Made by a program: the position numbers and the translations under genes. This document shows positions 3,328-53,775 of a DNA stretch of 64,000 nucleotides, in pieces; the stretch's first letter is position 1, and each line of letters begins with the position of its first letter. The stretch lies in contig NIVC01001315.1 in the NCBI GenBank assembly GCA_002269645.1, forward strand, positions 186,001-250,000, given 5' to 3'. The notes under the pieces were generated by a model. The model did no database searches, was not told the origin of the DNA, and worked only from the letters and a program-made list of their open reading frames with translations. This DNA is from Macrostomum lignano. Lineage: Eukaryota.

Positions 3328-4323
3328 CTATGGACGGAGGGTTGGCGCCGCCCAGGGAGGTCCCCCAGTGTCGCCAGCAGCTATAGTGCTCTCTGGAAAG
3401 GAGAGTTCAGCCCTGCGGGTGGCCCGAAGGTAGCGCATGAGCTGATTAAAGTTTTCGGGTTTGCACGCTTCAGTAATAGATGTGTGTGGCCCGAGGTAAG
3501 TGAGTCTGGCCCGCGTGAAGGCGGGACAGATGCTGACGAAATGCTCAGCGGTTTCGTCACCTGAGTTGCAAAAACTACAGGTGGCGTTGGTGGCGTTGCC
3601 CTGCAGGTACTGGTGCCTGGAGAAGCAGCCGTGACCAGAGAGGGTCATGGTGGCAGCCCGGATGTCTCTGCGCGAGAGGCGCAAGAGGAGCTTCCGGAGC
3701 TGGTGAGAGGGCTGAGGGACAGTGCCTCTGGATTGCCTGCAGTTCGTGCGGTTCGCCCAAGTCGAGCGGTGCTGAGTCCTGATCCACGCATCCGGGTTCC
3801 ATTGGTCATTGATGTTATCGCGCGAGTCGATAGCTACGGAGAAGCGCTGTCTCAGGTTGAGCGTTGAGGCAATGCCATCGGTGAAGACGCGATTGGCCTG
3901 ACACTCGTTGAGAAAGTTGAGGCACAGATCGCTATGCGGGACAAGGTTCCGCTTAGCAGGTGCTCTCATGTAAATGAATTTGACACCGGCATCAATTAGA
4001 CGCCGCGTCGTTCTAGCCGCCTCATTCCTGATGAAGAGGTCAAGAGGCGGAAGATTAAGGAAGGCCCCCATGCCAGCAAAGGGCGTGGACCTGGTGGCGT
4101 TGCAGATGAGCCTACACGCTCTGCCTTGGATCGTGTTGAGCAGGTCTGCATGGCTTTTGACCTGGGTAGCGCTAACCCAGACAACAGAGGCGTACGTAAT
4201 GGCAGGTCTAACTACGGAAGTATAGATCCACCAAAGCCGCTTTGGGGATAGACCCCAAGAAGTGCCAAGTGCTCGTCGGAGCTGGGCCAGGATGGCTGAG
4301 GCACGCTTGGCTTTTGCTTTCAC
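3328..4323 (-). CDS. Retroelement C-terminal part (RT thumb/linker and CCHC zinc motif); RNase H missing
   Basis: WIYTSVVRPAITYASVVW, LNLPPLDLFI, LSGHG...CSFC...ETAEHFVSICPAF. No RNase H DGS/E/D/GHxG...NExAD motifs. Confidence 0.8.
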   Translation of the reverse strand: MKAKAKRASAILAQLRRALGTSWGLSPKRLWWIYTSVVRPAITYASVVWVSATQVKSHADLLNTIQGRACRLICNATRSTPFAGMGAFLNLPPLDLFIRNEAARTTRRLIDAGVKFIYMRAPAKRNLVPHSDLCLNFLNECQANRVFTDGIASTLNLRQRFSVAIDSRDNINDQWNPDAWIRTQHRSTWANRTNCRQSRGTVPQPSHQLRKLLLRLSRRDIRAATMTLSGHGCFSRHQYLQGNATNATCSFCNSGDETAEHFVSICPAFTRARLTYLGPHTSITEACKPENFNQLMRYLRATRRAELSFPESTIAAGDTGGPPWAAPTLRP

Positions 4324-6620
4324 GTGGAGGACCAGTTGAGCCGGTGGTCAAGTATGACCCCGAGACATCTGGTCTGGTGCGCGAAGGCAATATCTCTGCC
4401 GTAGAGCTGCAGAGGACGTATGTTCCAGCGTAGTCTGCTGGTAAACATAATGGCAACGGTTTTGGGCTCAGAGAGTTCCAGACCATTGTCATTGGCCCAG
4501 GATTCTGCTTTGCGGATAAAGCTCTGCATCAGATCCCTGAGCGTGCTGGGAGACGGTCCTGCCACAATGGCCGTGACGTCATCAGCATACCCGACTTTGA
4601 AGACGGGGTCGGGTCGGGAGTCACTCAAAAGAGCGTCCATGACCAGGTTCCAGAGCGTCGGGGTGAGGACTCCGCCTTGGGGTCCACCCTTACAGACTCT
4701 GGTGGAGGCAGTTTGCCCAAGAAGTTGGGCAGTGACCGTACGGTTGGAGATCATGTACATGATCCACCGTATGAGGGTAGCATGAGCTTTGCGATTTTGA
4801 AGGGCCCTCTGAAACGCTTCAAAGATAACGTTGTCGAAGGCGCCAACAATGTCAAGAAAGAGAGCCAGAGCGTAACCGTCACCCAGTACCGCCCTTTCAA
4901 TCTTCTCGACAATCGCATGCAGGGCGCTGTCAGTCGACCTCCCGGTACGGAAGGCGTGCTGATTATTGCTGAGGGGCATCGCTGTCAGCTCGCAGGACAG
5001 CAGCCGCCAGAGAATAAGCCTCTCAGTGAGCTTAAGCATTGCTGACGTTAAGCTAATAGGCCGGAAGGCCTTGACGCTTTGGTAGTCACCCTTCCCAGGT
5101 TTGGGAATAAAGACTACCCGAGCTTCAGTCCAGCATTTGGGAACGTATCCCAGCTGGATAGAGGCCCGCATAAGATTGCGGGTGAGTCTCAGGAACGAGA
5201 GTATCTTGGCTGCTTCACGAAGGAGAACAGGGTAGATACCATCAGGTCCAGGAGATTTGAAGGGTTTGAAGGTTCTGACCGCACGAGCGATTAGGTCTTC
5301 AGTGACAATGCCCGCCGCTAGGGTGGCTCCATCCATCGAATGGTTGGGCTCCGGTCTAGCAGTAGGTACCCTCGGGAAGAATGTGCTAAGCATATGCTGA
5401 AGCACTTCTTCAGGGTCTTTAGTAAGAGAGCCATCATCTTTTTTTATCATGGCTAATTTGGCAGTAGCCTTCCCTTTGGCAGACTTTCCTCGGCGCATCT
5501 TGAGCTTGAGGGCACCCAGCTGGAAAGAGGATCCATTAGGGTACCGACTCGCCCAAGTGCTGGAAAGGCCGAGGACAATTGAGTTGCCCGTCTCCCCCCT
5601 GCGGACTTTGCGGTGATACACCAGTCCACTAGCAGGGAGGTCGGGGTTCAGACGCAGTAGGACCCGGCGAATAACGTCTGGTCCAGCTGCGGTGCTCTTA
5701 GCAGGGACGAAAACCACATAGGGTATCGTCTTTGGACGCTGGCCCCCGCGAAGAAAAAGAGCTCCGCCAAGGTCAGCATCCAAGGAGACCGTCGGTAGCC
5801 GCTGGAGCAGCTGCCGAGCGTCCTCCTCGCTGCTAGGAGCAATAAGAACGAATGTGCTTCGCAGCACCATCCGCTCAATGCCGATGGAGATTCCCTCCTC
5901 GACAGTCAGCTCAATCAGATAGGAGTCAACAGCACTCCACACTTTTTGAAGCTGATCAGTGGTCCAGTCCTGGTCGCGACCTTGGATGATCACTCCCGGG
6001 ATTTTGGCCTTGGCCTTCGCCGCAAAGGTAGCTCCCGAAGGAACCTCCTTGTTGGCAGTGGCCATTTGTTGCGCCGTGGTTTCGGCCTCAGCAGCCGCAG
6101 CAGCATCTCCAGGGAGCGCCGCCGCTGAACTACCGGAGCTTCCACCGGCCGGCCCGTCTGGTTGCCTTGGGACGCCAGTCGCTTCAGCATCCATGGCGGA
6201 CGCCGCCGCTTTGGCCCCCGCAGCTCCCTTCTTGGCCTGCCTTTTGGCGCGTTGTTTAGCGCGTTTGCGCTCAAGCCGAGCCCGCTGAGCTTCATCGGAT
6301 CTGCCAGATTTGGCCGGTCCTTTAGGCTCAGAGCTTGCGGTTCCCTTAGATCCACCAGCGGAGCTGGCAGGTCTTTGGGTATTTTGAGTTTGGTAGCTCT
6401 GGTCGGATCTGCCAGCAGAGCCAGCCGGTCCTTCCTTTGCCACGGTTGAATCAGTCGGTTGGGATCTGCCAGCAGGGCCGGCCGGTCCTTCGGACTGAGG
6501 TTTCGGTTTAGAAGGTTCCCCGTCCCTAGAAAAAGCTTGGTTATCCATAGTCGGCTCGAAGGCCATGAAAGGTTGGTGGGCTACCCTCAAAGGGGCGCGG
6601 TACCCACCCGGCCGCTCCAC
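4320..6620 (-). CDS. Retroelement ORF: gag-like ORF1 fused in frame to reverse transcriptase; no AP endonuclease
   Basis: 766-aa ORF. A low-complexity basic N-terminus and gag-like region run directly into LAMIKKDDGSLTKDPEEVLQHML and the RT. It ends at a 1-nt frameshift (TCCTCCACGTGA; ...NWSSHVKAKAKR expected). Confidence 0.85.
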   Translation of the reverse strand: MERPGGYRAPLRVAHQPFMAFEPTMDNQAFSRDGEPSKPKPQSEGPAGPAGRSQPTDSTVAKEGPAGSAGRSDQSYQTQNTQRPASSAGGSKGTASSEPKGPAKSGRSDEAQRARLERKRAKQRAKRQAKKGAAGAKAAASAMDAEATGVPRQPDGPAGGSSGSSAAALPGDAAAAAEAETTAQQMATANKEVPSGATFAAKAKAKIPGVIIQGRDQDWTTDQLQKVWSAVDSYLIELTVEEGISIGIERMVLRSTFVLIAPSSEEDARQLLQRLPTVSLDADLGGALFLRGGQRPKTIPYVVFVPAKSTAAGPDVIRRVLLRLNPDLPASGLVYHRKVRRGETGNSIVLGLSSTWASRYPNGSSFQLGALKLKMRRGKSAKGKATAKLAMIKKDDGSLTKDPEEVLQHMLSTFFPRVPTARPEPNHSMDGATLAAGIVTEDLIARAVRTFKPFKSPGPDGIYPVLLREAAKILSFLRLTRNLMRASIQLGYVPKCWTEARVVFIPKPGKGDYQSVKAFRPISLTSAMLKLTERLILWRLLSCELTAMPLSNNQHAFRTGRSTDSALHAIVEKIERAVLGDGYALALFLDIVGAFDNVIFEAFQRALQNRKAHATLIRWIMYMISNRTVTAQLLGQTASTRVCKGGPQGGVLTPTLWNLVMDALLSDSRPDPVFKVGYADDVTAIVAGPSPSTLRDLMQSFIRKAESWANDNGLELSEPKTVAIMFTSRLRWNIRPLQLYGRDIAFAHQTRCLGVILDHRLNWSST

Positions 6621-8441
6621 CTGACCGGGCAGTAGGCCAATAGCACCCTCAAGGCTGGCCCGACACCAGGAGGGGGACCGCTTGCGACCGGACTACTCCC
6701 CGGCCTTCCAGCCCATCGGCACGGTCAACACCTTAGGCATTAGAGAGTACGTTGAGCAGTACCACGGCCTGCAGGTTGGCGAGCCAGACCCGCATACCCA
6801 AATTCGGCCGAAGCCACTGGATAGGGTCGCCAGCGCCGGAGCCCAGTCTGTCCAGCAGCCCTAGGGACTGCCTTGAACACACGCGGGGACGAGTACCCTG
6901 GGTCGACTTGCGAGACAGCGTGGGGGGGTCTGCGGCTGCCAGAGGCAAATAGAGGGTGCAGACCTCCCACCAGCCTTGACCTGCTGAAGATAGGGGCAGG
7001 CGTGAAGCATCGCAGACCTTAGCCCATGGGCCTAGTCTGTCTCATACTTCACTGGCATGCTGAATACGCCTTCGCGCGCCCCTGGGGGGCCAGCACAGAG
7101 AATAAAGGCTGTGAACTTTTAAATCGGGTCTAAAGAAAATGGATTGACCAATCAGATCGCCTGGCAGCTCCGCCCCGCTCCTCCCGCAGTGTTCGACCTG
7201 ACCGCCAGCCTTGCCTCCCTGACACACTGGCGCCAGGAATTCGACTCGGAACGGTCCGGGTTCGAATCCGCGGCCGCCTTGCCGCCGCTGCTGTTGCTGG
7301 GTAACAAGGCCGACCTGCCCACGGGCAGCCGGGCGGTTTCCGGCCGATGCGTCGCCGCCTGGCGCAGCGCCCAGCAGCTGCCTAGCGATGCCGAGCGCTA
7401 CTTCGAGTGCTCCGCCAAGACTGGCCTGAATGTTGAGGCCGCCTTCCGCCACCTGGCCGCTGCCTGCCTGTCACGGAGGCGCCACCCGATGGAGGCCGGC
7501 CTGCGGCTCGCGCTGACTAACGGAACAGGCGACAGCGCCTCCGGCTGCGTGTGCCGCCCAGCCTGAATTTCCCACCAAATCTCAGGGGGGAGAATTTCTG
7601 TTTTATGCGACTCTGCAGTATTAGCCTTTTTGGCCCATTGCTCAGCGGGTGCTTTGGGTAAGCTGGGCATCACTGTCACGCAGCTATAAAAAGTACAGCG
7701 GACGGTCAGAGAGGAACCCGGCTCCAAAAAAAGGCTTATGAAAATGAACTCATGCACAGGCTTGAGCCGATACCTACGTGGTCCATCAGTAAAAAATGGA
7801 AAAGCGTGAAGAGTATTTCTCCCTTTGCTATCTGGCGGCAGTCTGCTTGCTCAGTATTTGTTTGAACAGAAGCAGCAGAGCAAGCCTGTGCTTGTTAGTT
7901 TTTAGTCCGATTTCTGTCCGTAAAAAAGATACTCTGCTGCATGCATAAGAAAGCAATGTAAAGTTTTTATCAAATATACCCTACCTGACTGACTGTCAAA
8001 TGTATAAATGTTTCATAAATTCACTACACATCACATATTGGTTCCGATTTGAAAGAATGATTTTTTATTACTGCCATTTTGTCTCTCTGCTACTGCCATT
8101 CCAGCCCTTGGATGCCTGCCGCTTTAATCTCACCTTGAGTCTGCACTGGTAATGACGGAGTTCGCAAATTGGATAATTAGAGCTTACATACAAACATGTA
8201 TATCGCTTTTCTCGAATCACTATTGACTGTCCTGACGCTGACAGAACAAATTAAAGGATGAAATTTCCTATACATTTTCACTTCAACTCCACGGCCATCA
8301 TGCATGACAGCTCGAGCTAATGAGCTGCAGGTATCTCTGACAGGTAGGCGACCGCATGCAGCAGCCTCGGTGTCGAGTTTCCAGTATTGGCCATAAAAGC
8401 GCATTTGGGCAGCCACGGCCTCAGCAACTGTTTTGAAGCAA

Positions 8442-10065
8442 ATGACGGCGCCGGGCGAAAATTCCTCGGCTGACACAGCGGGCGATGAAGAAGAGCCGAG
8501 CCCGAAGTGGCAGCTGCGCTACTGGCCCAACGTGCCTGGCAGAGCGGAGTTCATCCGCCTCATCCTGGTGGAAGCTGGGCAGGAGTTCAGCGAGCACTGC
8601 GACCCCGAGGCCATCTACCTGGACTTCAAGTGTCAGCAGAAAATTGGCTGGCCTGTGTTTGCTGTGCCCATGATAAAGCAGGGTGAGGGAGGCTGCTGTG
8701 CCCATGATAAAGCAGGGTGAGGGAGGCTGCTGTGCCCATGATAAAGCAGGGTGAGGGAGGCTGCTGTGCCCATGATAAAGCAGGGTGAGGGAGGTTGCTG
8801 TGCCCATGATAAAGCAGGGTGAGGGAGGTTGCTGTGCCCATGATAAAGCAGGGTGAGGGAGGTTGCTGTGCCCATGATAAAGCAGGGTGAGGGAGGTTGC
8901 TGTGCCCATGATAAAGCAGGGTGAGGGAGGTTGCTGTGCCCATGATAAAGCAGGGTGAGGGAGGCTGCTGTGCCCATGATAAAGCAGGGTGAGGGAGGTT
9001 GCTGTGCCCATGATAAAGCAGGGTGAGGTTGCTGTGCCCATGATAAAGCAGGGTGAGGGAGGTTGCTGTGCCCATGATAAAGCAGGGTGAGGTTGCTGTG
9101 CCCATGATAAAGCAGGGTGAGGGAGGTTGCTGTGCCCATGATAAAGCAGGGTGAGGTTGCTGTGCCCATGATAAAGCAGGGTGAGGGAGCTGTGCCCATG
9201 ATAAAGCAGGGTGAGGGAGGTTGCTGTGCCCATGATAAAGCAGGGTGAGGGAGGTTGCTGTGCCCATGATAAAGCAGGGTGAGGGAGGCTGCTGTGCCCA
9301 TGATAAAGCAGGGTAAAGCATAATATAAATTAAGTTATCCCAAAGAAGTTATCCCAAAGTTTACACTATTGTTTACCAAAGTCTTAAGTTAAATAGAGAG
9401 GAGTTTCGTAGAGGTAAATTCTGGATTCTGTTGGATGGACGGCGGGTGCTGGCATCTCTTACTGCACTTTTAGAAAGTAGAGCTGCAGCTGCAGCACTGA
9501 TGAGGCTACTTCGGACTGATGTTGGCCGATATTTCACCTCCCAGGCGACTTCGAGCTGGGCCAGACAGCCACCATCTGCCGCTACCTGGCCGAGCGGCTC
9601 GGCCTGCTGCCCGATGGCGAGCCGGACCGCTGGCGGGCCGACCAGACCTGCGCCACCGTCATGGACTTCATCACGGAGGGCCGGCTGGCCTTCCACGGCC
9701 GCAACTTCTACGAGTCGTACTTCGGCCAGGAGGCGGAGACGCGGCCCTACATTGACTATTTTGAGCGGCACCGGCTGCCCAAGTTCCTGCGCCACTTCGA
9801 GCAGGTGCTCAGCTTCAACGCGGCCAACTGGGACGCTTCTGGCGGCGGCCGGTTCGTCGTTGGCCGGCGGGTGACCTACTGCGACCTCTGCCTGCTGCAC
9901 GTGCTGCGTGCTGCGGAGTCGCAGTTTCCGGCCGCCTGGGCCCGCAGCATCGGCGACTGTCCGAGGCTGGCCGAGTTCAAGGCCGGAATGGAGGACCGAC
10001 CGAGAGTTCGAGACTACCTGAGCTCGGCCAGGTGCAAGCCGTTTCAGGGGAACAGCATGATGTGA
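8442..10065 (+). CDS. Glutathione S-transferase (sigma-like), 2 exons 8442-8682 and 9545-10065, 253 aa
   Basis: WQLRYWPNVPGRAEFIRLILVEAG; FAVPMIKQG|DFELGQTATICRYLAERLGL; VTYCDLCLLHVL; RPRVRDYLSS. Phase-1 intron GTGAGG...CTCCCAG; total 762 nt. Confidence 0.92.
8661..9316 (+). repeat. Minisatellite, ~20 copies of a 34-bp unit GCTGTGCCCATGATAAAGCAGGGTGAGGGAGG(C/T)T spanning the GST exon 1 end and donor
   Basis: The first copy encodes AVPMIKQG and contains the donor. A few copies are 30 bp. Confidence 0.95.
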
Positions 10066-10408
10066 TGGGGCCGGGCCATTGGTAGACTGCAGATGGATCA
10101 TCGCTATAAACTACAGGCGTTCGATCTTTACTACATTAATTTGCCCGTAGTTTTAAGACAAATGAAGTGCAGCTTCTTGGTGATGGTGCTTTGTCACGAA
10201 TAAAGGCAAGTTCGGTTGCTCGATCAAATACTTGAATATTAGCGAATGTGAAGATTACTAATCACGTTAAATTAAAAGCATTGCATATTGCTTGAAATTC
10301 ACTGATCACATGCAGCACAGCATCAAGATTGCTTCTTTATCGGGAATTGTTGGACCGCATTCGGCACTGAAGAGTTGGAACGAAGTTTAACTGAGCTTCT
10401 GGTGCTAC

Positions 10409-10668
10409 CGACACCTCTCCTGACCTCCTGTGGGCACCACCGCTCCCGATCTCCTTCAGTGGGCATCACCGCTCCCGACCTCCTTCAGTGGGCCCACCGC
10501 TCCCGACCTCCTTCAGTGGGCCCACCGCTCCCGACCTCCTTCAGTGGGCACCACCGCTCCTGACCTCCTTCAGTGGGCACCACCGCTTCTGACCTCCTTC
10601 AGTGGGCACCACCGCTCCTGACCTCCTTCAGTGGGCACCACCGCTTCTGACCTCCTTCAGTGGGCACC
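10409..10668. repeat. Minisatellite, ~9 copies of a 27-29-bp unit CACCGCTCCTGACCTCCTTCAGTGGGCAC
   Basis: Direct tandem copies visible. Confidence 0.9.
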
Positions 10669-11161
10669 AACACAAGCCTCAGCCTACAACGCTAGTCTTG
10701 TTCGTACGCCAATGTGCGTTTCAAGCAAGACCTAGAAGGAAGATATATTGTGCACTAAAATGAAGTCAAGCAGACGCACTGTTTGTCATGAATTCCTCAT
10801 GTTTTTATTTATTTAACTAAGTCTCCTTAAATTATGATCCATATTTATTTTATAACATTTAAATAGAATTGTTTCCATCAAATTTTAATTGATAAGATCA
10901 GGGAAAAATCATGACGAACTTACAGGTAAAATTAGCACTTGGGATCATCTTTTGACTAAATTTCGCATAGCGCGTTTGCAAAAGAAATTACTGGGAGTTT
11001 TTCTAGCCTTTTTGAGGTTTTTGTGGGGATTTTGATGTCTAAGGACTGCATGCTTACACAGACTCAAGATTTGGAGCTTATGTTAATGCTGCTGTCTATG
11101 CGTGAGCAGTCTCTGATGGCGCTAGCTGGTCTTTTGGCCAATAAGGATGAACTTGGCATGC

Positions 11162-11582
11162 TCAATGATATTGTCCGTCGTGCAGATGATGGCCATGTCC
11201 GTCGTGCATGTGATGGTCATGTCCGTCGTGCAGATGATGGTCATGTCCGTCGTGCATGTGATGGTCATGTCCGTCGTGCGGATGATGGTCATGTCCGTCG
11301 TGCGGATGATGGTCATGTCCGTCGTGCGGATGATGGTCATGTCCGTCGTGCAGATGATGGTCATGTCCGTCGTGCGGATGATGGTCATGTCCGTCGTGAA
11401 TGTGATGGTCATGTCCGTCGTGCGGATGATGGTCATGTCCGTCGTGCGGATGATGGTCCGTCTTGCCGGGTCCTCAGTTGATTCCTCAGCAGCATTTCGC
11501 CAGCGCTGAGGGCCTCCGTGCTGACCGCCAGCGCTGCCAGGCTCGTCACAACGAATGTTAGGATCGCGATAGTCGATGTCAT
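11162..11582 (-). CDS. His-rich secreted peptide, paralogue 1 (one apparent +1 frameshift at 11455-11456)
   Basis: ATG at 11582 gives signal-like MTSTIAILTFVVTSLAALAVSTEA, then LSAGEMLLRNQLRTRQDG. Removing one C gives HHPH(DGHDHHxH)x~11 DGQYH* with TGA at 11164-11162. The N-terminal motif matches paralogue 2. Confidence 0.65.
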
Positions 11583-12044
11583 GCTGGCGGTTGATCGAGC
11601 TTGCTGGTACGAGGCTGCAACTTGAGAGTATTTGCCCACCACTTGCTTTGGCTGTCGCTTGCTCACTAAACCTGAGAGGCTGCCCCAACCACCGCTCCGG
11701 CCTGTGGCCTCTTATGCTGTGCTGCGGCAGTGTCACTTTCGTCTGTGGCTGAAACCGTTGGCCTGTAGGCGCAATTTCTCAAGCTTAAGGCCTGAACTGT
11801 TATGCCGAGCAAAACTTTTGGCCATAGACTATTATCTGCTTGTCCGTAGCTGGATCGCTGAATTCAGAAAAGTACAACGATTCAATATAGCTGGTACGCA
11901 CGCGATCCATCTTGATCATTTAGTATCTGGGCCCGCTTGTACTTTTAGTCAACATCAAGAATTCGCTTTTTTGTCATACTCGTAGATTTAAAGACTGGGT
12001 GGTTTTCCAAATAATAGTGGCTAACAAATAAATCTGTCATTCTA

Positions 12045-12262
12045 TCCACTGGTCTTTGCCTTTATCCACTGGTCCTTGCCTCTTATCCACTGGTCCTTGC
12101 TTCTATCCACTGGTCTTTGCCTCTATCCACTGGTCCTTGCCTCTTATCCACTGGTCCTTGCTTCTATCCACTGGTCTTTGCCTCTATCCACTGGTCCTTG
12201 CCTCTTATCCACTGGTCCTTGCCTCTTATCCACTGGTCCTTGCCTCTATCCACTGGTCTTTG
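12045..12262. repeat. Minisatellite, ~10 copies of a 20-22-bp unit CTATCCACTGGTC(C/T)TTGCCT
   Basis: Direct tandem copies. Confidence 0.9.
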
Positions 12263-46017: not shown

Positions 46018-47096
46018 GGGTCCACCCCAACTGCCAGCCGGAAAACTGCCAGCTGGAAAACTGCGAGCCGACAACTGCCAGCCGGAAAACTGCCAGCCGA
46101 CAATTGCCAGCCGACAACTGCCAGTCGACAACTGCCAGTCGACAATTGCCAGCCGAGAAAACTGCCAGCCGGAAAACTGCCAGCCGACAACTGCCAGTCG
46201 ACAATTGCCAGTCGACAATTGCCAGCCGAGAAAACTGCCAGCCGGAAAACTGCCAGCCGACAACTGCCAGTCGACAACTGCCAGCCGACAAGTTCTAGAT
46301 AATTGAATCTACTGTAGCCTACTTATTAGCTAAGTAAAAAGCACGAAACTGTTTGGCTAGTAAAAGGCTTGTGGGGTAGCCTTAAATGTCGCCCTTCCCT
46401 TCCCTAAATTTTTCAGATTTTCTGTAATGCCTATTGTAAATATTTCTGTATTGAAAGTTTATTTACTTTATTATTTAATTTGCGATTGCGATTACTATAT
46501 GACGCAATCCTAGATAAGTCTATTAAATTACTTTACTTAAATAAAGCTTTCAAAGAAAGAGCAAAGGCTACCTAAAATACGAAATTTGAATGCCTTCTCC
46601 TTCACATCCATACTTCTAATGGAAATCTGAAAAATTTAGGGAATGGAAGGGCGACATTTAAGGCTACCCCACAAGCCTTTTGCTAGCCAAACAGTTTCGT
46701 GCTTTTTACTTAGCTAATAAGTAGGCTACAGTAGATTCAATTATCTAGAACTTGTCGGCTGGCAGTTGTCGGCTGGCAGATTTCTCGGCTGGCAGTTGTC
46801 GGCTGGCAGTTTTCCGGCTGGCAGTTTTCTCGGCTGACAATTGTCGACTGGCAATTGTCGACTGGCAGTTGTCGGCTGGCAGTTTTCCGGCTGGCAGTTT
46901 TCTCGGCTGGCAATTGTCGGCTGACAGTTGTCGGCTGGGAGTTGTCGGCTGGCAATTGTCGGCTGGCAGTTGTCGACTGGCAGTTGTCGGCTGGCAATTG
47001 TCGGCTGGGAGTTGTCGGCTGGCAATTGTCGGCTGGCAGTTTTCCGGCTGGCAGTTGTCGGCTGGCAGTTTTCCGGCTGGCAGTTGGGGTGCTCCC
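46018..47096. mobile_element. Foldback (Mutator-like) element, 1079 bp, long inverted arms with tandem subrepeats, 9-bp TSD
   Basis: Termini GGGTCCACCCCAACTGCC / GGCAGTTGGGGTGCTCCC. TSD GCTCTGACA at 46009-46017 and 47097-47105. AACTGCCAGCCGAC arrays plus ~125 bp of unique sequence (46297-46423 versus 46622-46748) are inverted. Confidence 0.9.
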
Positions 47097-47712: not shown

Positions 47713-49775
47713 TCACACAGGAGTGACACCTTTCACTGCCTTATTGTACTTAAAGAACAAAAAGCCCAGAGCGGCCCCGGTGAGGAGGTTCGTGGGCAGC
47801 AAAACGCCCAGAGTGATTGCCGCGGCCGTGTTGAAAACGAAGTTGCAGCTGGGGACCGGACCAATCGGTGGCCTTGTGCTGGGCTCAGGCGTTGCCGTTG
47901 TGGCGGTGGTCGTGGTCGAGGTCGTTGTCGAGGTCATGGCCGTGGTGGTGGGAGAAGACTCAACCAGAGTGTTTACATAGTTAAGCGTTTGATCCCAGAA
48001 GCCGCAGTCGTCACGTCGGAAGCCATACGGCACGTTGTAGCTCGACGCAAAAGTTTCAAGGTCGATAGTGAAGTTGTGGTAGAACCGGTGGCTGCTGTTG
48101 TACTTGGCCCAGACTTCCTCCTCGTCCCTAGGCACGGGATCGCCCGTCTCAACAAACTTGGCCAGGTAGTCCATCATGCGGACAGACAGATCGGCCTGCT
48201 CGGGTTTTACGATCGGAGCATCGTCGGTCGGGTTTCCGAAGAAGTAGTACGCGTCCGAGCCGTGAGAGGCGCCGATGTAGTTGGGTGTGTTGTCCTGCTC
48301 CGAGAACACGTAGAAGTAGACGTCGTTCGACGTTCCCTGCATTAAAAAATAGTTCGAAAATGCTGCAATCATACACTGCTCAGAGTTGCATGACTAGTTA
48401 AAGCGATATTACAGATGCTAGATAAGCTAACCTGGTTCTTCTCGGACATCTTCTCGGCGAACTCGTTCGCAGCGCTCACGAAGAGCCGATCAGAGGCTCC
48501 ATCCAGCCACCGCTTGTACTGCGCCGGTCCCGATGGGTTTCCGAAGTCCGTCAGTCGGTCGTACATCACATTCTGTCCAGTAACGCTCAGTAGGTCCGGT
48601 TGCCTCTCGTAGTACCTGAACTGGTCCCGGAGCACTCTCTCATAAGTGGCCCTGTCAGCCAGCTGGTCCTGTGTGAGCTTCTGCGACTCCAGGCTGCGCT
48701 CAACGTACACAGCAGCTTCTGCATTCGTCACTCCAATCATGAGACTCATCCCCTCAAAACGACCATTACGGAAGGCCTCAATGGGATCCTCCTTGATGTA
48801 GTCACCGTCGATGACTGGAGGAAACTCGACGCCCTGGAACAGACGGTTGTAGTTAAGCTGCTCGTTGACAAGCTTCTCGGGGGAAACCTCACGAAGGCAC
48901 TGGATTGTGGCATTGAAGTCGCCCTGATCCGGAAGAGGGCAGCTGAGCTGACGGACGGCAAAGTCCAAGTGAAGCCTCTCTACTAGGCTGGTGTCGTTCC
49001 GCACCGACCAGAAGACCATCGGAGAGCCGCCCAGCATGACGGCTCGCTTGAAGTACGTCTTCGTATTATCGTTCAGCATGTGGTACCCGACGGCTGCAGC
49101 TCCGGCGTCCAGACCCATCAGCGTCACCGTCTGCAGGTTTCCTCCGAACCTCTCGATGTTTTTATGCACGAACTCGAGTCCCAAGGCCTGATCTTTCAAG
49201 CCCATGTTTCCAGGCGCCACGGTAGAACTGAGTCGAAGAAAGCCGAGTACGCCAAGTCGGTACTGGAGACTCACGGTGACGATCGACTCGTGGGCTGTTA
49301 GAACACGGCCCGAATTGATTTCTTCGATGATGGAGCCGGTCTCGAAGCGGCCTCCATGGATCCACACGAGCACTGGGTAGCTTCCGGGGTTCGAGGAGGT
49401 TCCGTTGTACGGCGTCCAGATGTTGGCAGCGATGCAGCTCTCCGACATGGACTGGTAGTCTCCGCTCGCTCCGGGGTCTTGGTAGCACCTGCGGTCGAAA
49501 TCGAGCACATCCTGGACGAAGTCCCAATTGGTGAAGACGGGATGAGCAAATCGAAACTCTCCGGTGGGAACCTTGGCGAAGTTGATGCCGAGGAAGGAAC
49601 CGATGTGTACCATGTTTTTGTCTCCAGATCCTTTTGTCTCAATCACGGCGCCTCTGATAGGGCCTTGAGTTGTGGTGACGTTGAGGTACCGCACGATGGT
49701 GAAGTTCCTCTGGGCAGAGACCGCCGCGGCTGACAGAGCCAGCAGCAGCAGCAGGGTAGTGAGGGTCGATTCCAT
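47713..49775 (-). CDS. Cholinesterase/carboxylesterase-fold type I membrane protein A, catalytic Ser replaced by Asp; exons 49775-48432 and 48336-47713; 655 aa
   Basis: Signal peptide; FLGINFAKVP; SESCIAANIWTP; VLVWIHGGRF; VSLQYRLGVLGFL; GNMGLKDQALGL; VTLMGLDAGAAAV; GVTNAE; GASHGSD; Thr-rich stalk; hydrophobic segment; tail KYNKAVKGVTPV*. Confidence 0.93.
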
Positions 49776-50012
49776 GGCCAGTCTGTGTGGTGTGAGAGGT
49801 CTCTGGATCTGCTCCGCGGCCTCTGGCTCGGGCGAACGCAGCTAATATTTCTGCGCTGATTAGATACTGTAAGTTTGTTTTTAGTAACCAAGGCAACTAG
49901 AATTTTAACTTTTATTGATAAGGCCTTAGTAGACATATTGGTCTTCGCTCAGAGGCGCATTTGGTTTCACAAAAATTAATTTTGGAAACGCCACTCAATA
50001 CCAGCAATTTCG

Positions 50013-52048
50013 ATGGCATCGACCCTCACTACCCTGCTGCTGCTGCTGGCTCTGTCAGCCGCGGCGGTCTCTGCCCAGAGGAACTTCACCATCGTGCGGT
50101 ACCTCAACGTCACCACAACTCAAGGCCCTATCAGAGGCGCCGTGATTGAGACAAAAGGATCTGGAGACAAAAACATGGTACACATCGGTTCCTTCTTGGG
50201 CATCAACTTCGCCAAGGTTCCCACTGGAGAGTTTCGATTTGCTCATCCCGTCTTCACTAAGTGGGACTTCGTCCAGGATGTGCTCGATTTCGACCGCAGG
50301 TGCTACCAAGACCCCGGAGCGAGCGGAGACTACCAGACCATGTCGGAGAGCTGCATCGCTGCCAACATCTGGACGCCGTACAACGGAACCTCCTCGAACC
50401 CCGGAAGCTACCCAGTGCTTGTGTGGATCCATGGAGGCCGCTTCGAGACCGGCTCCATCATCGAAGAAATCAATTCGGGCCGTGTTCTAACAGCCCACGA
50501 GTCGATCGTCACCGTGAGTCTCCAGTACCGACTTGGCGTACTCGGCTTTCTTCGACTCAGCTCTACCGTGGCGCCTGGAAACATGGGCTTGAAGGATCAG
50601 GCCTTGGGACTCGAGTTCGTGCATAAAAACATCGAGAGGTTCGGAGGAAACCTGCAGACGGTGACGCTGATGGGTCTGGACGCCGGAGCTGCAGCCGTCG
50701 GGTACCACATGCTGAACGACAATACGAAGACGTACTTCAAGCGAGCCGTCATGCTGGGCGGCTCTCCGATGGTCTTCTGGTCGGTGCGCCAAAGCACAAC
50801 CGACGTGGAGAGGCTTCACGCAAAATTCGCCAGGGAGAAGCTGAACTGCGATCCTGATCGACTCGGTCTTGATGAAGCATTGAAGTGCTTGCGAGAAGTG
50901 GGTCCCGAGGCACTGATTAATGCTCAAAAAGAGTTCATCAAGGATTTTCAAGGTATTGAGTTTCCCCCGGTGATCGACGGTGACTACATCAAGGAGGACC
51001 CGGTTGTGGCGCTGCGAGGCCTCCGATTCGAACCAAAGCAGCTAATTATTGGCTTCACAAACTCAGAGGCCGCTACTTACGTAGAGTCATCGCTTCGTGA
51101 CAAGGGTTGGTCAAAGGAGGATCTTCAGGATCCCGCCAAGTACCGCAGCGTTATCGAGGACAACTTCCGCACCTACGAGCGAGAGCCGGACATCATGTCT
51201 ACCGCCGCCCGCAAGTTCATGACTGACAGATTCACCAGCTTTAGCAATCCTTCCGCTGAAGTCAACTTCCGGCGATGGCTCGATGCCGCCTCGGACCGCC
51301 TGTTCGTCTGCGCAGCCAACGAGTTCGCGGATCTTTCTACGCGGGTGACCGGTCAGGTGAGGGTTCCTTCAGTGCGCTTTTTTTTGTGTGTACATGTATA
51401 CAAGGACTCCTGCAAACAATAATGATTCAGTTTCCATCCAAGTTCGCCTTGTATCAAACATCCATCTACTTATTTCAGTCGGTGGACGTCTACTTCTACG
51501 TGTTCTCCGAGCAAGACAACACACCCAACTACGTCGGCGCCTCCCATGGCTCGGACGCGTACTACTTCTTCGGAAACCCGACCGACGATGCGCCGATCGT
51601 GTCGCCTGAGCAGGCCCAGCTGTCCGTCCGCATGATGGACTACCTGTCCAGGTTCGTGGCTACCGGGGACCCGGTGCCCAGGGACAACGACAGGGTCTGG
51701 GCCAAGTTCAACATCAGCCAGAAGTACTACCACAACTTCACCGCCGATTCAAGCGCCGGTTACAACATCAAATACGGTTTTCACCGCGATGACTGCGGCT
51801 TCTGGGACAAGACGCTGAAGTACGTCAACAGTCTCCAGTCAACGGCGCTAGCCCCAGCACCAGAGGATGTCCCGAAGGTCCGCGTAGTCCGAGACGTTCA
51901 CACTAACCTGACCTTAAATGAAGCGGGGATCTGCGATAATGTCGTGAACGCCACCACCCTGGCCATCATGATCCCCCTGCTCATCAGCAATGTTGCCCTG
52001 CTGGGCGCGCTGGTGTGGCTCCTGATCAAGTACAACTCGCTGGGCTGA
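50013..52048 (+). CDS. Cholinesterase/carboxylesterase-fold membrane protein B, catalytic Ser replaced by Asp; exons 50013-51356 and 51479-52048; 637 aa
   Basis: Same motifs as copy A (GLDAG with GAC at 50679-50681, GFTNSE, GASHGSD). Intron at the same position, after 1344 coding nt. C-terminal hydrophobic segment and short tail KYNSLG*. Confidence 0.93.
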
Positions 52049-53256
52049 GCTGGCGGTTTGAGCAGTCGAAACTGAGCGGATTTGACTTTCTAACTAACAA
52101 TGTAGAGTGCACTGCACGAGCTCGTTCTTAGATTTATACATTTATTTATATATCTATACATATCGGTTTCAAACAAGGCTATTTGAGACGCGCTTAATAG
52201 GTAAACTAATTCGAGAAATTGATAATCTGTTTTTTTTCCAACGACCAACTCTTCAATGTTCCAACCAAACAAATAAATTTTATAAATTTTATATTTCCGT
52301 TTCTTAGTGAGGTGGTTTTTTAGTGAGTAAAATTACCAACAAAGACTGGTCCTTGTGTCAAGTTTCACTTCTTCTGTAGCACTTCATCTCTACATTTTTT
52401 AATCCCTAGTCTAATGGGACCACGTTTAGTGACACCTTTGCTTTGCCTGCAGTTTTGAGCATTCATATATGGCAGCAAGCACAACTCTAAAGACTTCGCT
52501 AAGGTTAGCCAAGACAGCAACCATTGACAACACCAGCCATCAGGCAGGTTCGATCAGAGAGAAAAGCGCAGCGCCTCCACGGGGGCAAGTAGCGGTTGCC
52601 AGTAGCAACCGGTGGCAACAAAACTCTCTCTGGGGTGGCCTGTCGCTTATCTTAAGGGAATTTCAAGCGGTCCAAATCTCAAGTGGCGCGCACTGACATG
52701 CTTAAGAATACTTTTTTGCCCCCCTCACGCATCTTGCAGATAAGCGGAGCCGCAGCTGATGCCCCAGCTGGCACCACTCGGCTCGGAGCCGCCTTCGGGT
52801 CAGGCCGCGCCACCCCCCCCCCTATCAGCTCCTCCGACAGTAGAGAGAATTTTCTCTCTCGCCGTCTGCATTTGAAACTTTCTGCCGCTGCTTCGATAGG
52901 GCGCATTACTTTTAGAGGCCATCAGCCGTTATCTCGGTTCACTGTTCAATATTTTTCAAGTTTCACCTGCCCGCAGGTTGCTGCAGAAGTGGTTTTATCT
53001 TCTACAGAGTTTCATATCAGCGGGTCTACAGCAGTCAGCTATTGCAATTTGATCTTGACATTCTAGATTCAACCAGATTTTACTGCTCAAAATTTTTATC
53101 AACACTTTTGTTGGCGAGTCTAAGTTTTCTCTTAGACATGAACTTTTAAAACTTGGATACGCAGTGGTGGCAAAAGTCAGCAAACAATCCTGTTTTGATT
53201 CGAGGAGCATGCAGGCTGATCCCAGACCATCTCTCCTCATCTAAGGTCAAACTTTG

Positions 53257-53775
53257 ACACATCCCAACTCTGACACATCCCAACTCTGGCACATCCCAAC
53301 TCTGGCATATCCCAACTCTGACACATCCCAACTCTGACACATCCCAACTCTGACACATCACAACTCTGACACATCCCAACTCTGACACATCCCAACTCTG
53401 ACACATCACAACTCTGACACATCCCAACTCTGACACATCCCAACTCTGACACATCCCAACTCTGACACATCCCAACTCTGACACATCCCAACTCTGACAC
53501 ATCCCAACTCTAGCACATCCCAACTCTGACACATCCCAACTCTGACACATCACAACTCTGACACATCACAACTCTGACACATCCCAACTCTGACACATCC
53601 CAACTCTGACACATCCCAACTCTGACACATCCCAAGTCTGACACATCCCAACTCTGACACATCCCAACTCTGACACATCCCAACTCTGACACATCCCAAC
53701 TCTGACACATCCCAACTCTGACGCATCCCAACTCTGACACATCCCAACTCTGACGCATCCCAACTCTGACACATT
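53257..53775. repeat. 16-bp minisatellite ACATCCCAACTCTGAC
   Basis: ~32 tandem copies. Confidence 0.95.

What the first reader, a model, noticed from the sequence alone, without database searches (positions are those of the whole stretch)
47713..52048. Two cholinesterase-fold membrane proteins with an Asp at the nucleophile elbow but retained Glu and His
Seen: both copies read VTLMGLDAGAAAV where esterases have GESAG (GAC at 49109-49107 and 50679-50681). The oxyanion loop is HGGRF instead of HGGGF. The triad Glu (GVTNAE/GFTNSE) and His (GASHGSD) are kept. Both have a signal peptide and a C-terminal TM; copy A has a Thr-rich stalk and ends in a class I PDZ-type motif (VTPV), while copy B has a 6-aa tail. 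Established: Ser-less members of this fold (neuroligin, gliotactin, neurotactin) are adhesion molecules, and Asp-nucleophile alpha/beta hydrolases exist (epoxide hydrolases, haloalkane dehalogenases). Inference: either a lineage-specific adhesion/receptor pair, one signalling-competent and one tail-less, or an esterase scaffold with Asp-His-Glu chemistry.
Basis: partly seen in the sequence, partly recalled or inferred. Interest (0 to 1): 0.82.

Follow-up and report, generated by a model that had tools for sequence, protein, structure and literature searches.

The report
Flatworm cholinesterase-like membrane protein gene pair
Two head-to-head genes of the flatworm Macrostomum lignano encode cell-surface proteins with a cholinesterase fold in which the catalytic serine is an aspartate; they are real, conserved and flatworm-specific, but are most likely non-enzymatic binding proteins, a known kind of thing.

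Summary
The window is Macrostomum lignano genome. Two divergently transcribed two-exon genes (A, minus strand, 655 aa; B, plus strand, 637 aa) encode full-length carboxylesterase/cholinesterase-fold proteins. Each has a signal peptide, a C-terminal hydrophobic anchor, Asp at the nucleophile elbow (GLDAG), Arg at the third oxyanion-loop glycine (HGGRF), and the triad Glu and His.

The two copies are not independent evidence. Their first 807 nt form a 97% identical gene-conversion tract that contains both the Arg and the Asp.

The genes are functional: ORFs and splice sites are intact, dN/dS is 0.13-0.20 against a duplicated locus, and the public annotation is RNA-seq derived.

They belong to an all-Macrostomum clade with no ortholog elsewhere. 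The clade is closer to cholinesterase-like proteins than to neuroligin. Clade members carry D, G, E or S at the nucleophile position.

Kept Glu and His is not evidence of catalysis, because neuroligins and most Ser-less relatives keep them too. GxDAG variants recur in turtles, locusts, ticks and nematodes.

Best reading: a lineage-specific pair of non-catalytic surface binding proteins. Asp-based catalysis is not excluded. The "signalling versus tail-less" idea is weak.

The parts
48432..49775 (-). Gene A exon 1 (codons 1-448): signal peptide, oxyanion loop HGGRF (R143 = 49349-49347), nucleophile elbow GLDAG (D223 = 49109-49107), triad Glu E353 (48719-48717)
   Evidence: ORF and splice junction read. 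Pfam COesterase E 7e-105. Residue mapping against AChE. Codons checked.
48337..48431 (-). Gene A intron, 95 nt, GT..AG, phase 0
   Evidence: The splice restores the frame. The GT..AG is kept in the duplicated locus L001.
47713..48336 (-). Gene A exon 2 (codons 449-655 plus stop): triad His H473 (48264-48262), C-terminal helices, Thr-rich stalk (47958-47848), hydrophobic anchor (47826-47752), 12-aa tail KYNKAVKGVTPV (47751-47716)
   Evidence: In the AF2 model the stalk 576-632 has pLDDT below 50 and a helix spans 632-649.
49776..50012 (.). 237-bp intergenic spacer between the two start codons. It is not palindromic and is the presumed divergent promoter region.
   Evidence: The inverted repeat begins exactly at each ATG, so the spacer lies outside it. 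The promoter role is an inference.
50013..51356 (+). Gene B exon 1 (codons 1-448): signal peptide, HGGRF (R143 = 50439-50441), GLDAG (D223 = 50679-50681), triad Glu E352 (51066-51068)
51357..51478 (+). Gene B intron, 122 nt, GT..AG, phase 0, at the same codon position as in gene A
51479..52048 (+). Gene B exon 2 (codons 449-637 plus stop): triad His H471 (51545-51547), short non-Thr-rich linker, hydrophobic anchor (51953-52027), 6-aa tail KYNSLG (52028-52045)
48969..49775 (.). Left arm of the 807-nt inverted repeat (codons 1-269 of A). It is a recent gene-conversion tract shared with B.
   Evidence: 97% complementary. dS 0.055 here against 1.7 downstream. pS per 45-codon block is 0.00-0.17 here and then jumps to about 0.8.
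50013..50819 (.). Right arm of the 807-nt inverted repeat (codons 1-269 of B)
48068..48331 (.). Left arm of a second, older conversion tract (85% identical) at the start of exon 2, covering the His loop
   Evidence: I2. pS is 0.28 for codons 453-497, against about 0.8 in the flanking blocks.
51478..51741 (.). Right arm of the second tract (B exon 2 start)

Best explanation
A and B are a Macrostomum-specific, expressed, selectively maintained pair of type I membrane-anchored proteins. Each ectodomain is a complete cholinesterase/carboxylesterase fold that no longer works as a serine esterase. The nucleophile is Asp, the third oxyanion-loop Gly is Arg, the Glu before the nucleophile is Leu, and the choline-binding part of the Cys loop is deleted.

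They most likely act as cholinesterase-like surface binding proteins (pseudoenzymes), in the manner of neuroligins and other cholinesterase-like adhesion molecules. A glycosylated globular domain is held off the membrane, on an O-glycosylated Thr-rich stalk in A and Mlig028046. It binds a partner, while the 6-12-residue tails carry little or no signalling capacity of their own.

Arg143 and Asp223 sit next to each other in the former active centre and probably neutralise each other. This is an inference and the distance was not measured.

The two genes keep an identical N-terminal half by gene conversion. They have diverged to saturation in residues about 270-452 and in the stalk, anchor and tail, so any difference in partner or in assembly lies there.

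Shown: gene structures, fold, residue identities, clade membership, purifying selection and the conversion mosaic. Inferred: lack of catalysis, surface binding role, the Arg-Asp pairing and the membrane topology.
For: Fold and residues:
- Pfam COesterase matches the full length.
- The AChE alignment places D, R, E and H on the catalytic and oxyanion positions.
- The AF2 model has mean pLDDT 82.5, with 91-98 for the 10-residue blocks holding R143, D223, E353 and H473.
- Foldseek top matches are BChE and AChE, with neuroligin-1 (3vkf) at rank 38, all near E 1e-44.

Loss of esterase features:
- GESAG has become GLDAG and GGG has become GGR.
- The Cys loop is shorter by about 10 residues. This removes the segment that holds the choline-binding Trp in the aligned AChEs.

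Family context:
- The genes sit in an all-Macrostomum clade (69% bootstrap).
- Members of that clade carry D, G, E or S at the nucleophile position, and several have lost Glu and/or His. The clade as a whole is therefore not under selection for a triad.
- D (GAC) and R (CGC) are each one base change from a Gly codon GGC.

Base rate: 39 of 49 Ser-less relatives keep Glu and His, neuroligins included. [quoted passage not shown]

Surface-protein anatomy:
- There is a leader peptide and 7 N-x-S/T sites in each protein.
- The Thr-rich stalk, a PPIGP(V/I)PS motif, and the hydrophobic segment followed by basic residues are shared by A and Mlig028046 at 37% identity.

Real genes:
- ORFs and GT..AG introns are intact at both loci.
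- omega is 0.20 (A versus A2), 0.13 (B versus B2), and 0.19 (A versus B in the saturated part).
- The GenBank models of this assembly derive from RNA-seq assemblies (PMC5730564).
Against: - No direct evidence of binding, localisation or lack of activity exists.
- Asp is a legitimate nucleophile in other alpha/beta hydrolases, and the elbow keeps the small-x-Nu-x-small shape.
- R143, D223, E353 and H473 are all invariant across the A / B / Mlig028046 subclade at only 37-39% overall identity. This could reflect a functional site.
- All 9 Asp variants found outside Macrostomum keep Glu and His. This is not significant against the Gly rate (0.76^9 is about 0.09) and the cases are not independent.
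- Arg and Asp do not strictly co-vary in the clade. One domain has Arg with Gly and another has Asp with Phe. The salt-bridge idea is therefore not required by the data.
- The tree is neighbour-joining only, with moderate support.
Confidence: 0.6

Rival explanations
1. The ectodomains are active ecto-enzymes that use an Asp223-His473-Glu353 triad, as haloalkane dehalogenases and epoxide hydrolases do. Alternatively they use Asp/His as a general base, with Arg143 helping to bind an anionic or polar substrate. This would be a chemistry not yet described in the type B carboxylesterase family.
For: - Asp sits exactly at the nucleophile elbow in a G-x-D-x-G turn.
- Glu and His are kept in A, B and the 37-39% identical Mlig028046, together with Arg.
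- GxDAG variants with Glu and His kept recur in several animal lineages. They are conserved across three turtle genera that are 63-73% identical to each other, and across two grasshopper genera.
- The genes are under purifying selection.
Against: - Keeping Glu and His is the rule in non-catalytic relatives too (PMC3531081).
- Sister domains in the same clade have Gly or Glu at the nucleophile position and have lost His or Glu.
- Pfam reported only COesterase and a sub-threshold BD-FAE match, so a relationship to dehalogenase or epoxide hydrolase families was not reported by that scan. The cap-domain residues those enzymes need cannot be identified.
- A bulky Arg at the oxyanion-loop position next to the nucleophile would more plausibly fill the site.
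- The paper searches found no report of an Asp-nucleophile enzyme in this family.
Confidence: 0.15
2. A and B are the flatworm orthologs of a characterised cholinesterase-like adhesion molecule (neuroligin, gliotactin, neurotactin or glutactin) and so are not new.
For: - The overall architecture is the same as neuroligin: leader, cholinesterase-like domain, O-glycosylated stalk, one TM.
- A ends in a T-x-V motif, as neuroligins end in a class I PDZ ligand (the neuroligin end is from memory).
- Neuroligin-1 structures match the model at E about 5e-44.
Against: - Neuroligin-1 scores about 165 bits and 27% identity, against 246 bits for AChE.
- No neuroligin or gliotactin passed E 1e-70 in the profile search, whereas many cholinesterase-like proteins did.
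- The NJ tree separates the all-Macrostomum clade from neuroligin-1.
- The cytoplasmic tails are 6-13 residues rather than a long signalling tail.
- The PDZ-type end is not conserved in Mlig028046.
Confidence: 0.04
3. The pair is a decaying duplicate or an assembly artefact with no function.
For: - M. lignano assemblies are highly redundant (PMC5730564).
- Several public gene models for this locus are broken or fused.
- The locus lies among tandem arrays.
Against: - Four intact copies exist at two loci with canonical introns.
- omega is 0.13-0.20.
- A and B have saturated synonymous divergence outside the conversion tracts yet keep open frames.
- Transcript-derived annotation exists.
Confidence: 0.03
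4. Variant on anchoring: copy B is GPI-anchored rather than transmembrane, as some acetylcholinesterase forms are. Its C-terminal hydrophobic segment would be a cleaved GPI signal.
For: B has only six residues after a 23-25-residue hydrophobic stretch. Small residues (NEAG, CDN) lie 8-15 residues upstream and could serve as an omega site.
Against: The segment is followed by Lys. It aligns with the K-[YW]-x-[KS]-L-[AG] juxtamembrane motif of A and Mlig028046, which have 12-13-residue basic tails typical of stop-transfer anchors. No GPI predictor was available.
Confidence: 0.25

Closest known systems
Neuroligins and other cholinesterase-like adhesion molecules (non-catalytic type B carboxylesterase-fold surface proteins)
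   Same: - Leader peptide, complete cholinesterase fold without the catalytic Ser, triad Glu and His retained, glycosylated stalk and a single C-terminal membrane anchor.
- A's C-terminus fits S/T-x-hydrophobic.
- The structural match is as good as to cholinesterases.
   Different: - The genes are not orthologous.
- The nucleophile position is Asp, not Gly.
- Arg sits in the oxyanion loop.
- The cytoplasmic tails are only 6-13 residues.
- The PDZ-type end is not conserved in the nearest paralog.
Acetyl- and butyrylcholinesterase and the invertebrate and deuterostome 'cholinesterase-like' proteins
   Same: These are the highest-scoring relatives by sequence: 246 bits to AChE in the PDB, and about 365 bits to the profile for amphioxus, hemichordate and priapulid cholinesterase-like proteins. 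The first two disulfides are shared, and the third is also kept in B.
   Different: - There is no catalytic Ser.
- GES has become GLD and GGG has become GGR.
- The Cys loop is shortened, so the choline-binding Trp segment is missing.
- Copy A has lost one Cys of the third disulfide.
Oxyanion-loop mutants BChE G117H and blowfly esterase E3 (LcaE7) G137D
   Same: The substitution of the third oxyanion-loop Gly by a charged or polar side chain is at the same position as R143 here. The equivalence comes from the alignment plus my own knowledge of the numbering. BChE G117H appears as PDB entry 2xmb. The E3 mutation is cited in PMC8387733.
   Different: Those enzymes keep the catalytic Ser and gain organophosphate hydrolase activity. 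Here the Ser is gone as well.
Asp-nucleophile alpha/beta hydrolases (haloalkane dehalogenases, epoxide hydrolases)
   Same: Asp at the nucleophile elbow with a His base and an acidic partner (PMC3531081).
   Different: - They belong to different alpha/beta-hydrolase families. Pfam reported only COesterase and a sub-threshold BD-FAE match for A and B.
- Their cap-domain residues for binding halide or epoxide have no identifiable counterpart here.
Other natural GxDAG variants in the same Pfam family
   Same: Asp at the nucleophile position with Glu and His kept. Fully aligned cases: turtle acetylcholinesterase-like proteins, Oxya and Schistocerca carboxylesterases, an Ornithodoros cholinesterase-like protein, and Parastrongyloides and Lineus proteins. 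Hofstenia 'AChE 3' also has GNDAG and the Glu, but its His region was not aligned.
   Different: - Those keep GGG (or GGD in the tick) rather than GGR.
- They are mostly 540-600 aa proteins without the stalk and anchor seen here.
- They are unrelated by descent to the Macrostomum clade.
- None was found to be functionally characterised in the papers searched.

Membership tests
Type B carboxylesterase/lipase family (Pfam PF00135 COesterase; ESTHER block C) | Full-length match to the family profile above the curated cut-off | tested here: met
   352.3 and 350.8 bits against a cut-off of 27, covering profile positions 4-501 and 4-515 of 515.
Type B carboxylesterase/lipase family (Pfam PF00135 COesterase; ESTHER block C) | Cholinesterase-type alpha/beta-hydrolase fold | tested here: met
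   The AF2 model has pLDDT 82.5 and pTM 0.83. Foldseek gives TM about 0.85-0.88 (normalised by target length) to BChE and AChE at E about 1e-44.
Type B carboxylesterase/lipase family (Pfam PF00135 COesterase; ESTHER block C) | Ser-Glu/Asp-His triad with Ser in G-x-S-x-G and a GGG/GGA oxyanion loop (defines catalytic members) | tested here: not met
   The motifs are GLDAG and HGGRF. Glu and His are present. A and B are therefore family members by descent but not canonical catalytic members.
Acetyl-/butyrylcholinesterase | Catalytic Ser plus the choline-binding Trp in the Cys (omega) loop | tested here: not met
   Ser is replaced by Asp. The loop between C97 and C114 is about 10 residues shorter than in the aligned AChEs, and the Trp-bearing segment is gapped.
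Neuroligin | Orthology: groups with neuroligins in a tree and scores best against them | tested here: not met
   Neuroligin-1 gives about 165 bits and 27% identity, against 246 bits for AChE. The NJ tree places A and B in an all-Macrostomum clade away from neuroligin-1. No neuroligin reached E 1e-70 with the clade profile.
Neuroligin | Long cytoplasmic domain ending in a PDZ-binding motif | tested here: not met
   The tails are 12 aa (A) and 6 aa (B). A's T-P-V end fits class I, but the paralog Mlig028046 ends Q-P-I.
Neuroligin | Neurexin-binding surface | not tested
   This needs model coordinates and a neurexin partner.
Gliotactin / neurotactin / glutactin (insect cholinesterase-like adhesion proteins) | Orthology to the Drosophila proteins | tested here: inconclusive
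   No named member appeared among hits at E 1e-20 or better or 1e-70 or better, nor among the 30 representative proteins whose names were looked up. No reference sequence was available for a direct comparison.
Asp-nucleophile alpha/beta hydrolases (haloalkane dehalogenase / epoxide hydrolase type) | Asp at the nucleophile elbow with a His base and an acid | tested here: met
   D223, H473 and E353 are assigned by alignment.
Asp-nucleophile alpha/beta hydrolases (haloalkane dehalogenase / epoxide hydrolase type) | Membership of those sequence families, and cap-domain residues that activate halide or epoxide | tested here: not met
   Pfam reported only COesterase and a sub-threshold BD-FAE match, and no dehalogenase- or epoxide-hydrolase-type family, for either protein. 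Cap residues cannot be identified.
Asp-nucleophile alpha/beta hydrolases (haloalkane dehalogenase / epoxide hydrolase type) | Catalytic turnover through an alkyl-enzyme ester on Asp | not testable with these tools
   This needs enzyme assays and mass spectrometry.

The most novel reading that the evidence does not exclude
The cholinesterase/carboxylesterase fold has repeatedly evolved a working Asp-His-Glu centre: in Macrostomum, and independently in turtles, grasshoppers, ticks and nematodes. The Macrostomum proteins would then be membrane-anchored ecto-enzymes, with an added active-site Arg, that carry out a reaction not yet known for this family.
Probability: 0.12. Interest if true: 0.8.

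Novelty: new variant of a known kind. Interest (0 to 1): 0.36.

Why it matters
Cholinesterase-fold proteins that have lost catalysis have been recruited several times as cell-surface recognition molecules. A flatworm-specific clade with its own active-site remodelling (Ser to Asp plus Gly to Arg) and its own stalk and anchor module adds an independent example. It occurs in an organism where RNAi and transgenesis are routine.

The pair also shows clearly how gene conversion between inverted paralogs can hold half of a protein identical while the other half diverges to saturation.

If the Asp were catalytic, which I consider unlikely, it would extend the chemistry known for a heavily studied enzyme family. 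It would also make the scattered GxDAG variants in other animals worth assaying.

Tried and rejected
- Measuring triad and Arg-Asp geometry. The AF2 model was obtained but its coordinates are not exposed to the scripting sandbox, so no distances could be computed.
- Expression and localisation data. The gene identifiers Mlig008387, Mlig029545, Mlig028046, Mlig032086 and Mlig012102 occur in no searchable paper. They also do not occur in the held supplements of three M. lignano transcriptomic papers.
- Literature on Ser-to-Asp variants of carboxylesterases. Two searches found nothing relevant. The locust esterase table has Gly and His variants but no Asp.
- Orthologs in other flatworms. None was found by the exhaustive single-sequence search or the clade profile search. 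Transcriptomes of other Macrostomum species appear not to be in the collections, so 'Macrostomum-specific' means 'among public proteins searched'.
- Strict Arg/Asp covariation as support for a salt bridge. This was rejected, because the clade contains Arg with Gly and Asp with Phe.
- 'All Asp variants keep Glu and His' as evidence of catalysis. This was rejected as not significant (9 of 9 against 26 of 34 for Gly) and not independent.
- Clustering of the wider family. The loci of Mlig032086 and Mlig028046 hold single copies without a head-to-head partner.
- More copies in the window. A tblastn of A against the window found only A and B.

Full report
**What is there**

The region holds two divergently transcribed genes whose start codons are 237 bp apart.

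- Gene A runs on the minus strand: exon 1 49775..48432, a 95-nt GT..AG intron, exon 2 48336..47713. It encodes 655 residues.
- Gene B runs on the plus strand: exon 1 50013..51356, a 122-nt GT..AG intron, exon 2 51479..52048. It encodes 637 residues.
- Both introns are phase 0 and fall after codon 448.
- Both proteins match Pfam COesterase over the whole profile (E 7e-105 and 2e-104).

The nearest database entries are all from the flatworm Macrostomum lignano, so the window is M. lignano genome. BOX15_Mlig029545g1 is gene A itself, and BOX15_Mlig008387g1 is a 92% identical copy of A at another locus.

**Checking the observation**

Alignment to solved acetylcholinesterases (best E 5e-72) places the key residues as follows:

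- D223 falls on the catalytic Ser (GESAGA versus GLDAGA).
- R143 falls on the third Gly of the oxyanion loop.
- E353 (A) / E352 (B) falls on the triad Glu.
- H473 (A) / H471 (B) falls on the triad His.

The leader peptide, the Thr-rich stalk of A, the C-terminal hydrophobic segments and the two tails (KYNKAVKGVTPV and KYNSLG) are all present. An AlphaFold2 model of A has mean pLDDT 82.5, with 91-98 for the 10-residue blocks that hold the four active-site residues. The stalk is disordered and a C-terminal helix is predicted. Foldseek matches butyryl- and acetylcholinesterase and neuroligin-1 about equally well, all near E 1e-44.

The first 807 nt of the two coding sequences form a 97% identical inverted repeat that starts exactly at each ATG. 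Synonymous divergence there is 0.055, against about 1.7 (saturated) for codons 270-575. A block-wise scan shows:

- pS of 0.00-0.17 up to codon 270;
- pS of about 0.8 for codons 271-452;
- a second, older shared tract at the start of exon 2, with pS 0.28 for codons 453-497;
- pS of about 0.8 again at the 3' end.

A and B are therefore old paralogs whose N-terminal half, including both the Arg and the Asp, is kept identical by gene conversion. 'Both copies have Asp' is one observation, not two.

Independent support comes from elsewhere. A duplicated locus (L001, contig NIVC01000151.1, 94.5% identical over 6.8 kb) carries the same head-to-head pair with the same residues. A distant paralog, Mlig028046 (37-39% identical), has EGR / GLDAG / E / H with the same GAC and CGC codons.

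**Are the genes real?**

All four copies at the two loci have open frames and canonical splice sites.

| Comparison | dN/dS |
|---|---|
| A versus its duplicate (A2) | 0.20 |
| B versus its duplicate (B2) | 0.13 |
| A versus B, saturated part | 0.19 |

The GenBank annotation of this assembly was built from RNA-seq-based transcript assemblies (PMC5730564). The existence of the models therefore implies transcripts. I found no expression pattern in searchable papers or in the held supplements.

**Where they belong**

An exhaustive phmmer search of 1.84 billion representative proteins found nothing closer than general family level outside M. lignano. The best single-domain hit is the M. lignano paralog Mlig028046 at 252 bits. 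The next single-domain hits reach about 195 bits, and those whose names were looked up are 'cholinesterase-like' proteins of hemichordates, a crinoid, amphioxus and a crustacean.

A profile built from the Macrostomum sequences again recovered only M. lignano proteins at the top, followed by cholinesterase-like proteins at about 365 bits. No neuroligin or gliotactin passed E 1e-70, and no other flatworm appeared.

A neighbour-joining tree (76 domains, 452 columns, 100 bootstraps) groups A and B at 100%. They sit inside an all-Macrostomum clade (69%) with Mlig028046, Mlig032086 and four domains of a fused model, A0A1I8G704. This clade is separate from neuroligin-1 and from the cholinesterase-like group.

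Within the clade the nucleophile position holds D, G, E or S, and several members have lost the Glu and/or the His. Only the subclade A / B / Mlig028046 has R-D-E-H. A and Mlig028046 also share a Thr-rich stalk, a PPIGP(V/I)PS motif and a similar membrane segment (GVLL..T..GALGF). All three share a short basic tail that starts K-[YW]-x-[KS].

**How it most likely works**

The proteins cannot be serine esterases or cholinesterases:

- The Ser is gone.
- The Glu before it is Leu.
- The third oxyanion Gly is Arg.
- The Cys loop is about 10 residues shorter, which removes the segment that carries the choline-binding Trp in the aligned enzymes.

The retained Glu and His are not evidence of catalysis. 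Of 49 Ser-less domains from other organisms that could be aligned at all four positions, 39 keep both, including every neuroligin. [quoted passage not shown]

The anatomy is that of a cell-surface protein: a leader, seven N-glycosylation sequons, a mucin-like stalk in A and Mlig028046, and a hydrophobic anchor followed by basic residues. I therefore read A and B as lineage-specific cholinesterase-like surface binding proteins, that is, pseudoenzymes.

Arg143 and Asp223 occupy adjacent positions of the former active centre, and I infer that they pair. I could not measure this because the model coordinates are not exposed. The clade also contains Arg without Asp and Asp without Arg, so the pairing is plausible but not required.

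Both GAC (Asp) and CGC (Arg) are one step from GGC. The only clade member with Ser uses AGT. This is compatible with a path from Ser through Gly to Asp in an already inactive ancestor, but it does not prove it.

A and B share their N-terminal half and the His loop. Functional differences must therefore lie in residues 270-452 and in the stalk, anchor and tail. In this fold, residues 270-452 include the helical subdomain around the gorge mouth and one dimerisation helix (assignment from my own knowledge of the fold).

- The 'lineage-specific adhesion/receptor pair' reading is consistent with everything found.
- 'One signalling-competent, one tail-less' is weak. A's tail is only 12 residues. Its T-P-V end is not conserved as a class I PDZ ligand in Mlig028046, which ends S-Q-P-I. 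B's KYNSLG looks like a truncated version of the shared juxtamembrane motif.
- B could instead be GPI-anchored. I consider this the less likely option, and no predictor was available to test it.
- 'Asp-His-Glu chemistry' cannot be excluded.

In favour of Asp-based chemistry, Asp at this position with Glu and His kept recurs in other animals:

- three turtle genera, 63-73% identical to each other, whose squamate relatives have GQSAG;
- two grasshopper genera;
- a soft tick, a nematode (two domains) and a nemertean;
- partial cases in an acoel, a tsetse fly, a Drosophila species and a copepod.

All nine fully aligned Asp variants keep Glu and His. This is not significant against the Gly rate, and the cases are not independent. 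I put Asp-based catalysis at about 0.15.

**Comparison with what is known, and novelty**

By descent the proteins are members of the type B carboxylesterase family. They fail the tests for cholinesterase (no Ser, no choline-binding loop). They also fail the tests for neuroligin (no orthology, no long tail).

They work most like the cholinesterase-like adhesion molecules, but they form a separate, Macrostomum-restricted clade with its own active-site changes and anchor module. That makes them a new variant of a known kind. They are moderately interesting to people who study this fold and are not surprising in principle.

**Limits**

- The tree is neighbour-joining with moderate support.
- Reference sequences for gliotactin, neurotactin and glutactin were not available.
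- Signal peptide, TM, GPI and O-glycosylation calls rest on inspection and hydropathy.
- No structure coordinates, activity data or expression patterns could be obtained.

Noticed in passing
window 48969-49775 / 50013-50819 and 48068-48331 / 51478-51741: The two inverted paralogs are a gene-conversion mosaic. Codons 1-269 are nearly identical (pS about 0.05) and a second, older tract covers codons about 453-497 (pS 0.28). The rest is saturated (pS about 0.8). In the 5' tract A is closer to B at the same locus (dS 0.055) than to its own duplicate at the other locus (dS 0.155).
   Followed up: yes
L001 (GCA_002269645.1 contig NIVC01000151.1, 728906-751030), genes at 7777-9826(-) and 10001-12125(+): A second copy of the whole head-to-head pair exists, 94.5% identical over 6.8 kb including the flanking tandem arrays. 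This fits the duplicated genome of the sequenced M. lignano line.
   Followed up: yes
public models P0002 (Mlig029545g1), P0004, P0005, P0006 compared with window 47713-52048: Several public gene models of this locus are faulty. P0002 reads residues about 48-145 in another frame, although the window has a clean ORF. P0005 has a similar frame slip. P0006 fuses antisense and repeat ORFs to gene B.
   Followed up: partly
gene A residues S433 and C559 (exon 1 / exon 2); gene B C433 and C554: Copy A, and its duplicate A2, has Ser where B and Mlig028046 keep the first Cys of the family's third disulfide. This leaves C559 unpaired. All three proteins also have a lone juxtamembrane Cys (A C612, B C600). 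Free cysteines could make intermolecular bonds.
   Followed up: partly
proteins P0336, P0343, P0345 (turtles), P0252 and P0376 (grasshoppers), P0311 (tick), P0156 (Parastrongyloides), P0182 (Lineus), P0186 (Hofstenia 'AChE 3'): Asp at the nucleophile elbow (mostly GQDAG) recurs in unrelated animal lineages of the same Pfam family. Glu and His are kept in all nine fully aligned cases, and the oxyanion loop is usually an intact GGG. The turtle set is conserved across three genera, while squamate relatives have GQSAG. No functional study was found.
   Followed up: partly
L003 10001-12526 (Mlig028046) and protein P0121 (A0A1I8G704, 3380 aa): Mlig028046 is intronless and carries a Thr/Pro-rich mucin-like region of about 200 residues before its cholinesterase-like domain. 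A0A1I8G704 is a fused model of seven cholinesterase-like domains with G, D or E at the nucleophile position. It probably represents a tandem array of further family members.
   Followed up: partly
window 46028-46291 and 46752-47086; 53250-53774; about 30 further arrays across 1-64000: The gene pair is flanked by minisatellites. Two arrays of the same 14-nt unit lie in opposite orientation just 3' of gene A, and a 16-nt array lies 1.2 kb 3' of gene B. The whole window is dense with arrays of 13-50-nt units. Many long 'ORFs' in the mechanical list are just these repeats.
   Followed up: no
window 4320-6620 (-), with adjoining ORF 3328-4323 (-): A 766-aa ORF has a reverse-transcriptase domain (RVT_1, E 7e-28). 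It is a retroelement unrelated to the finding.
   Followed up: no
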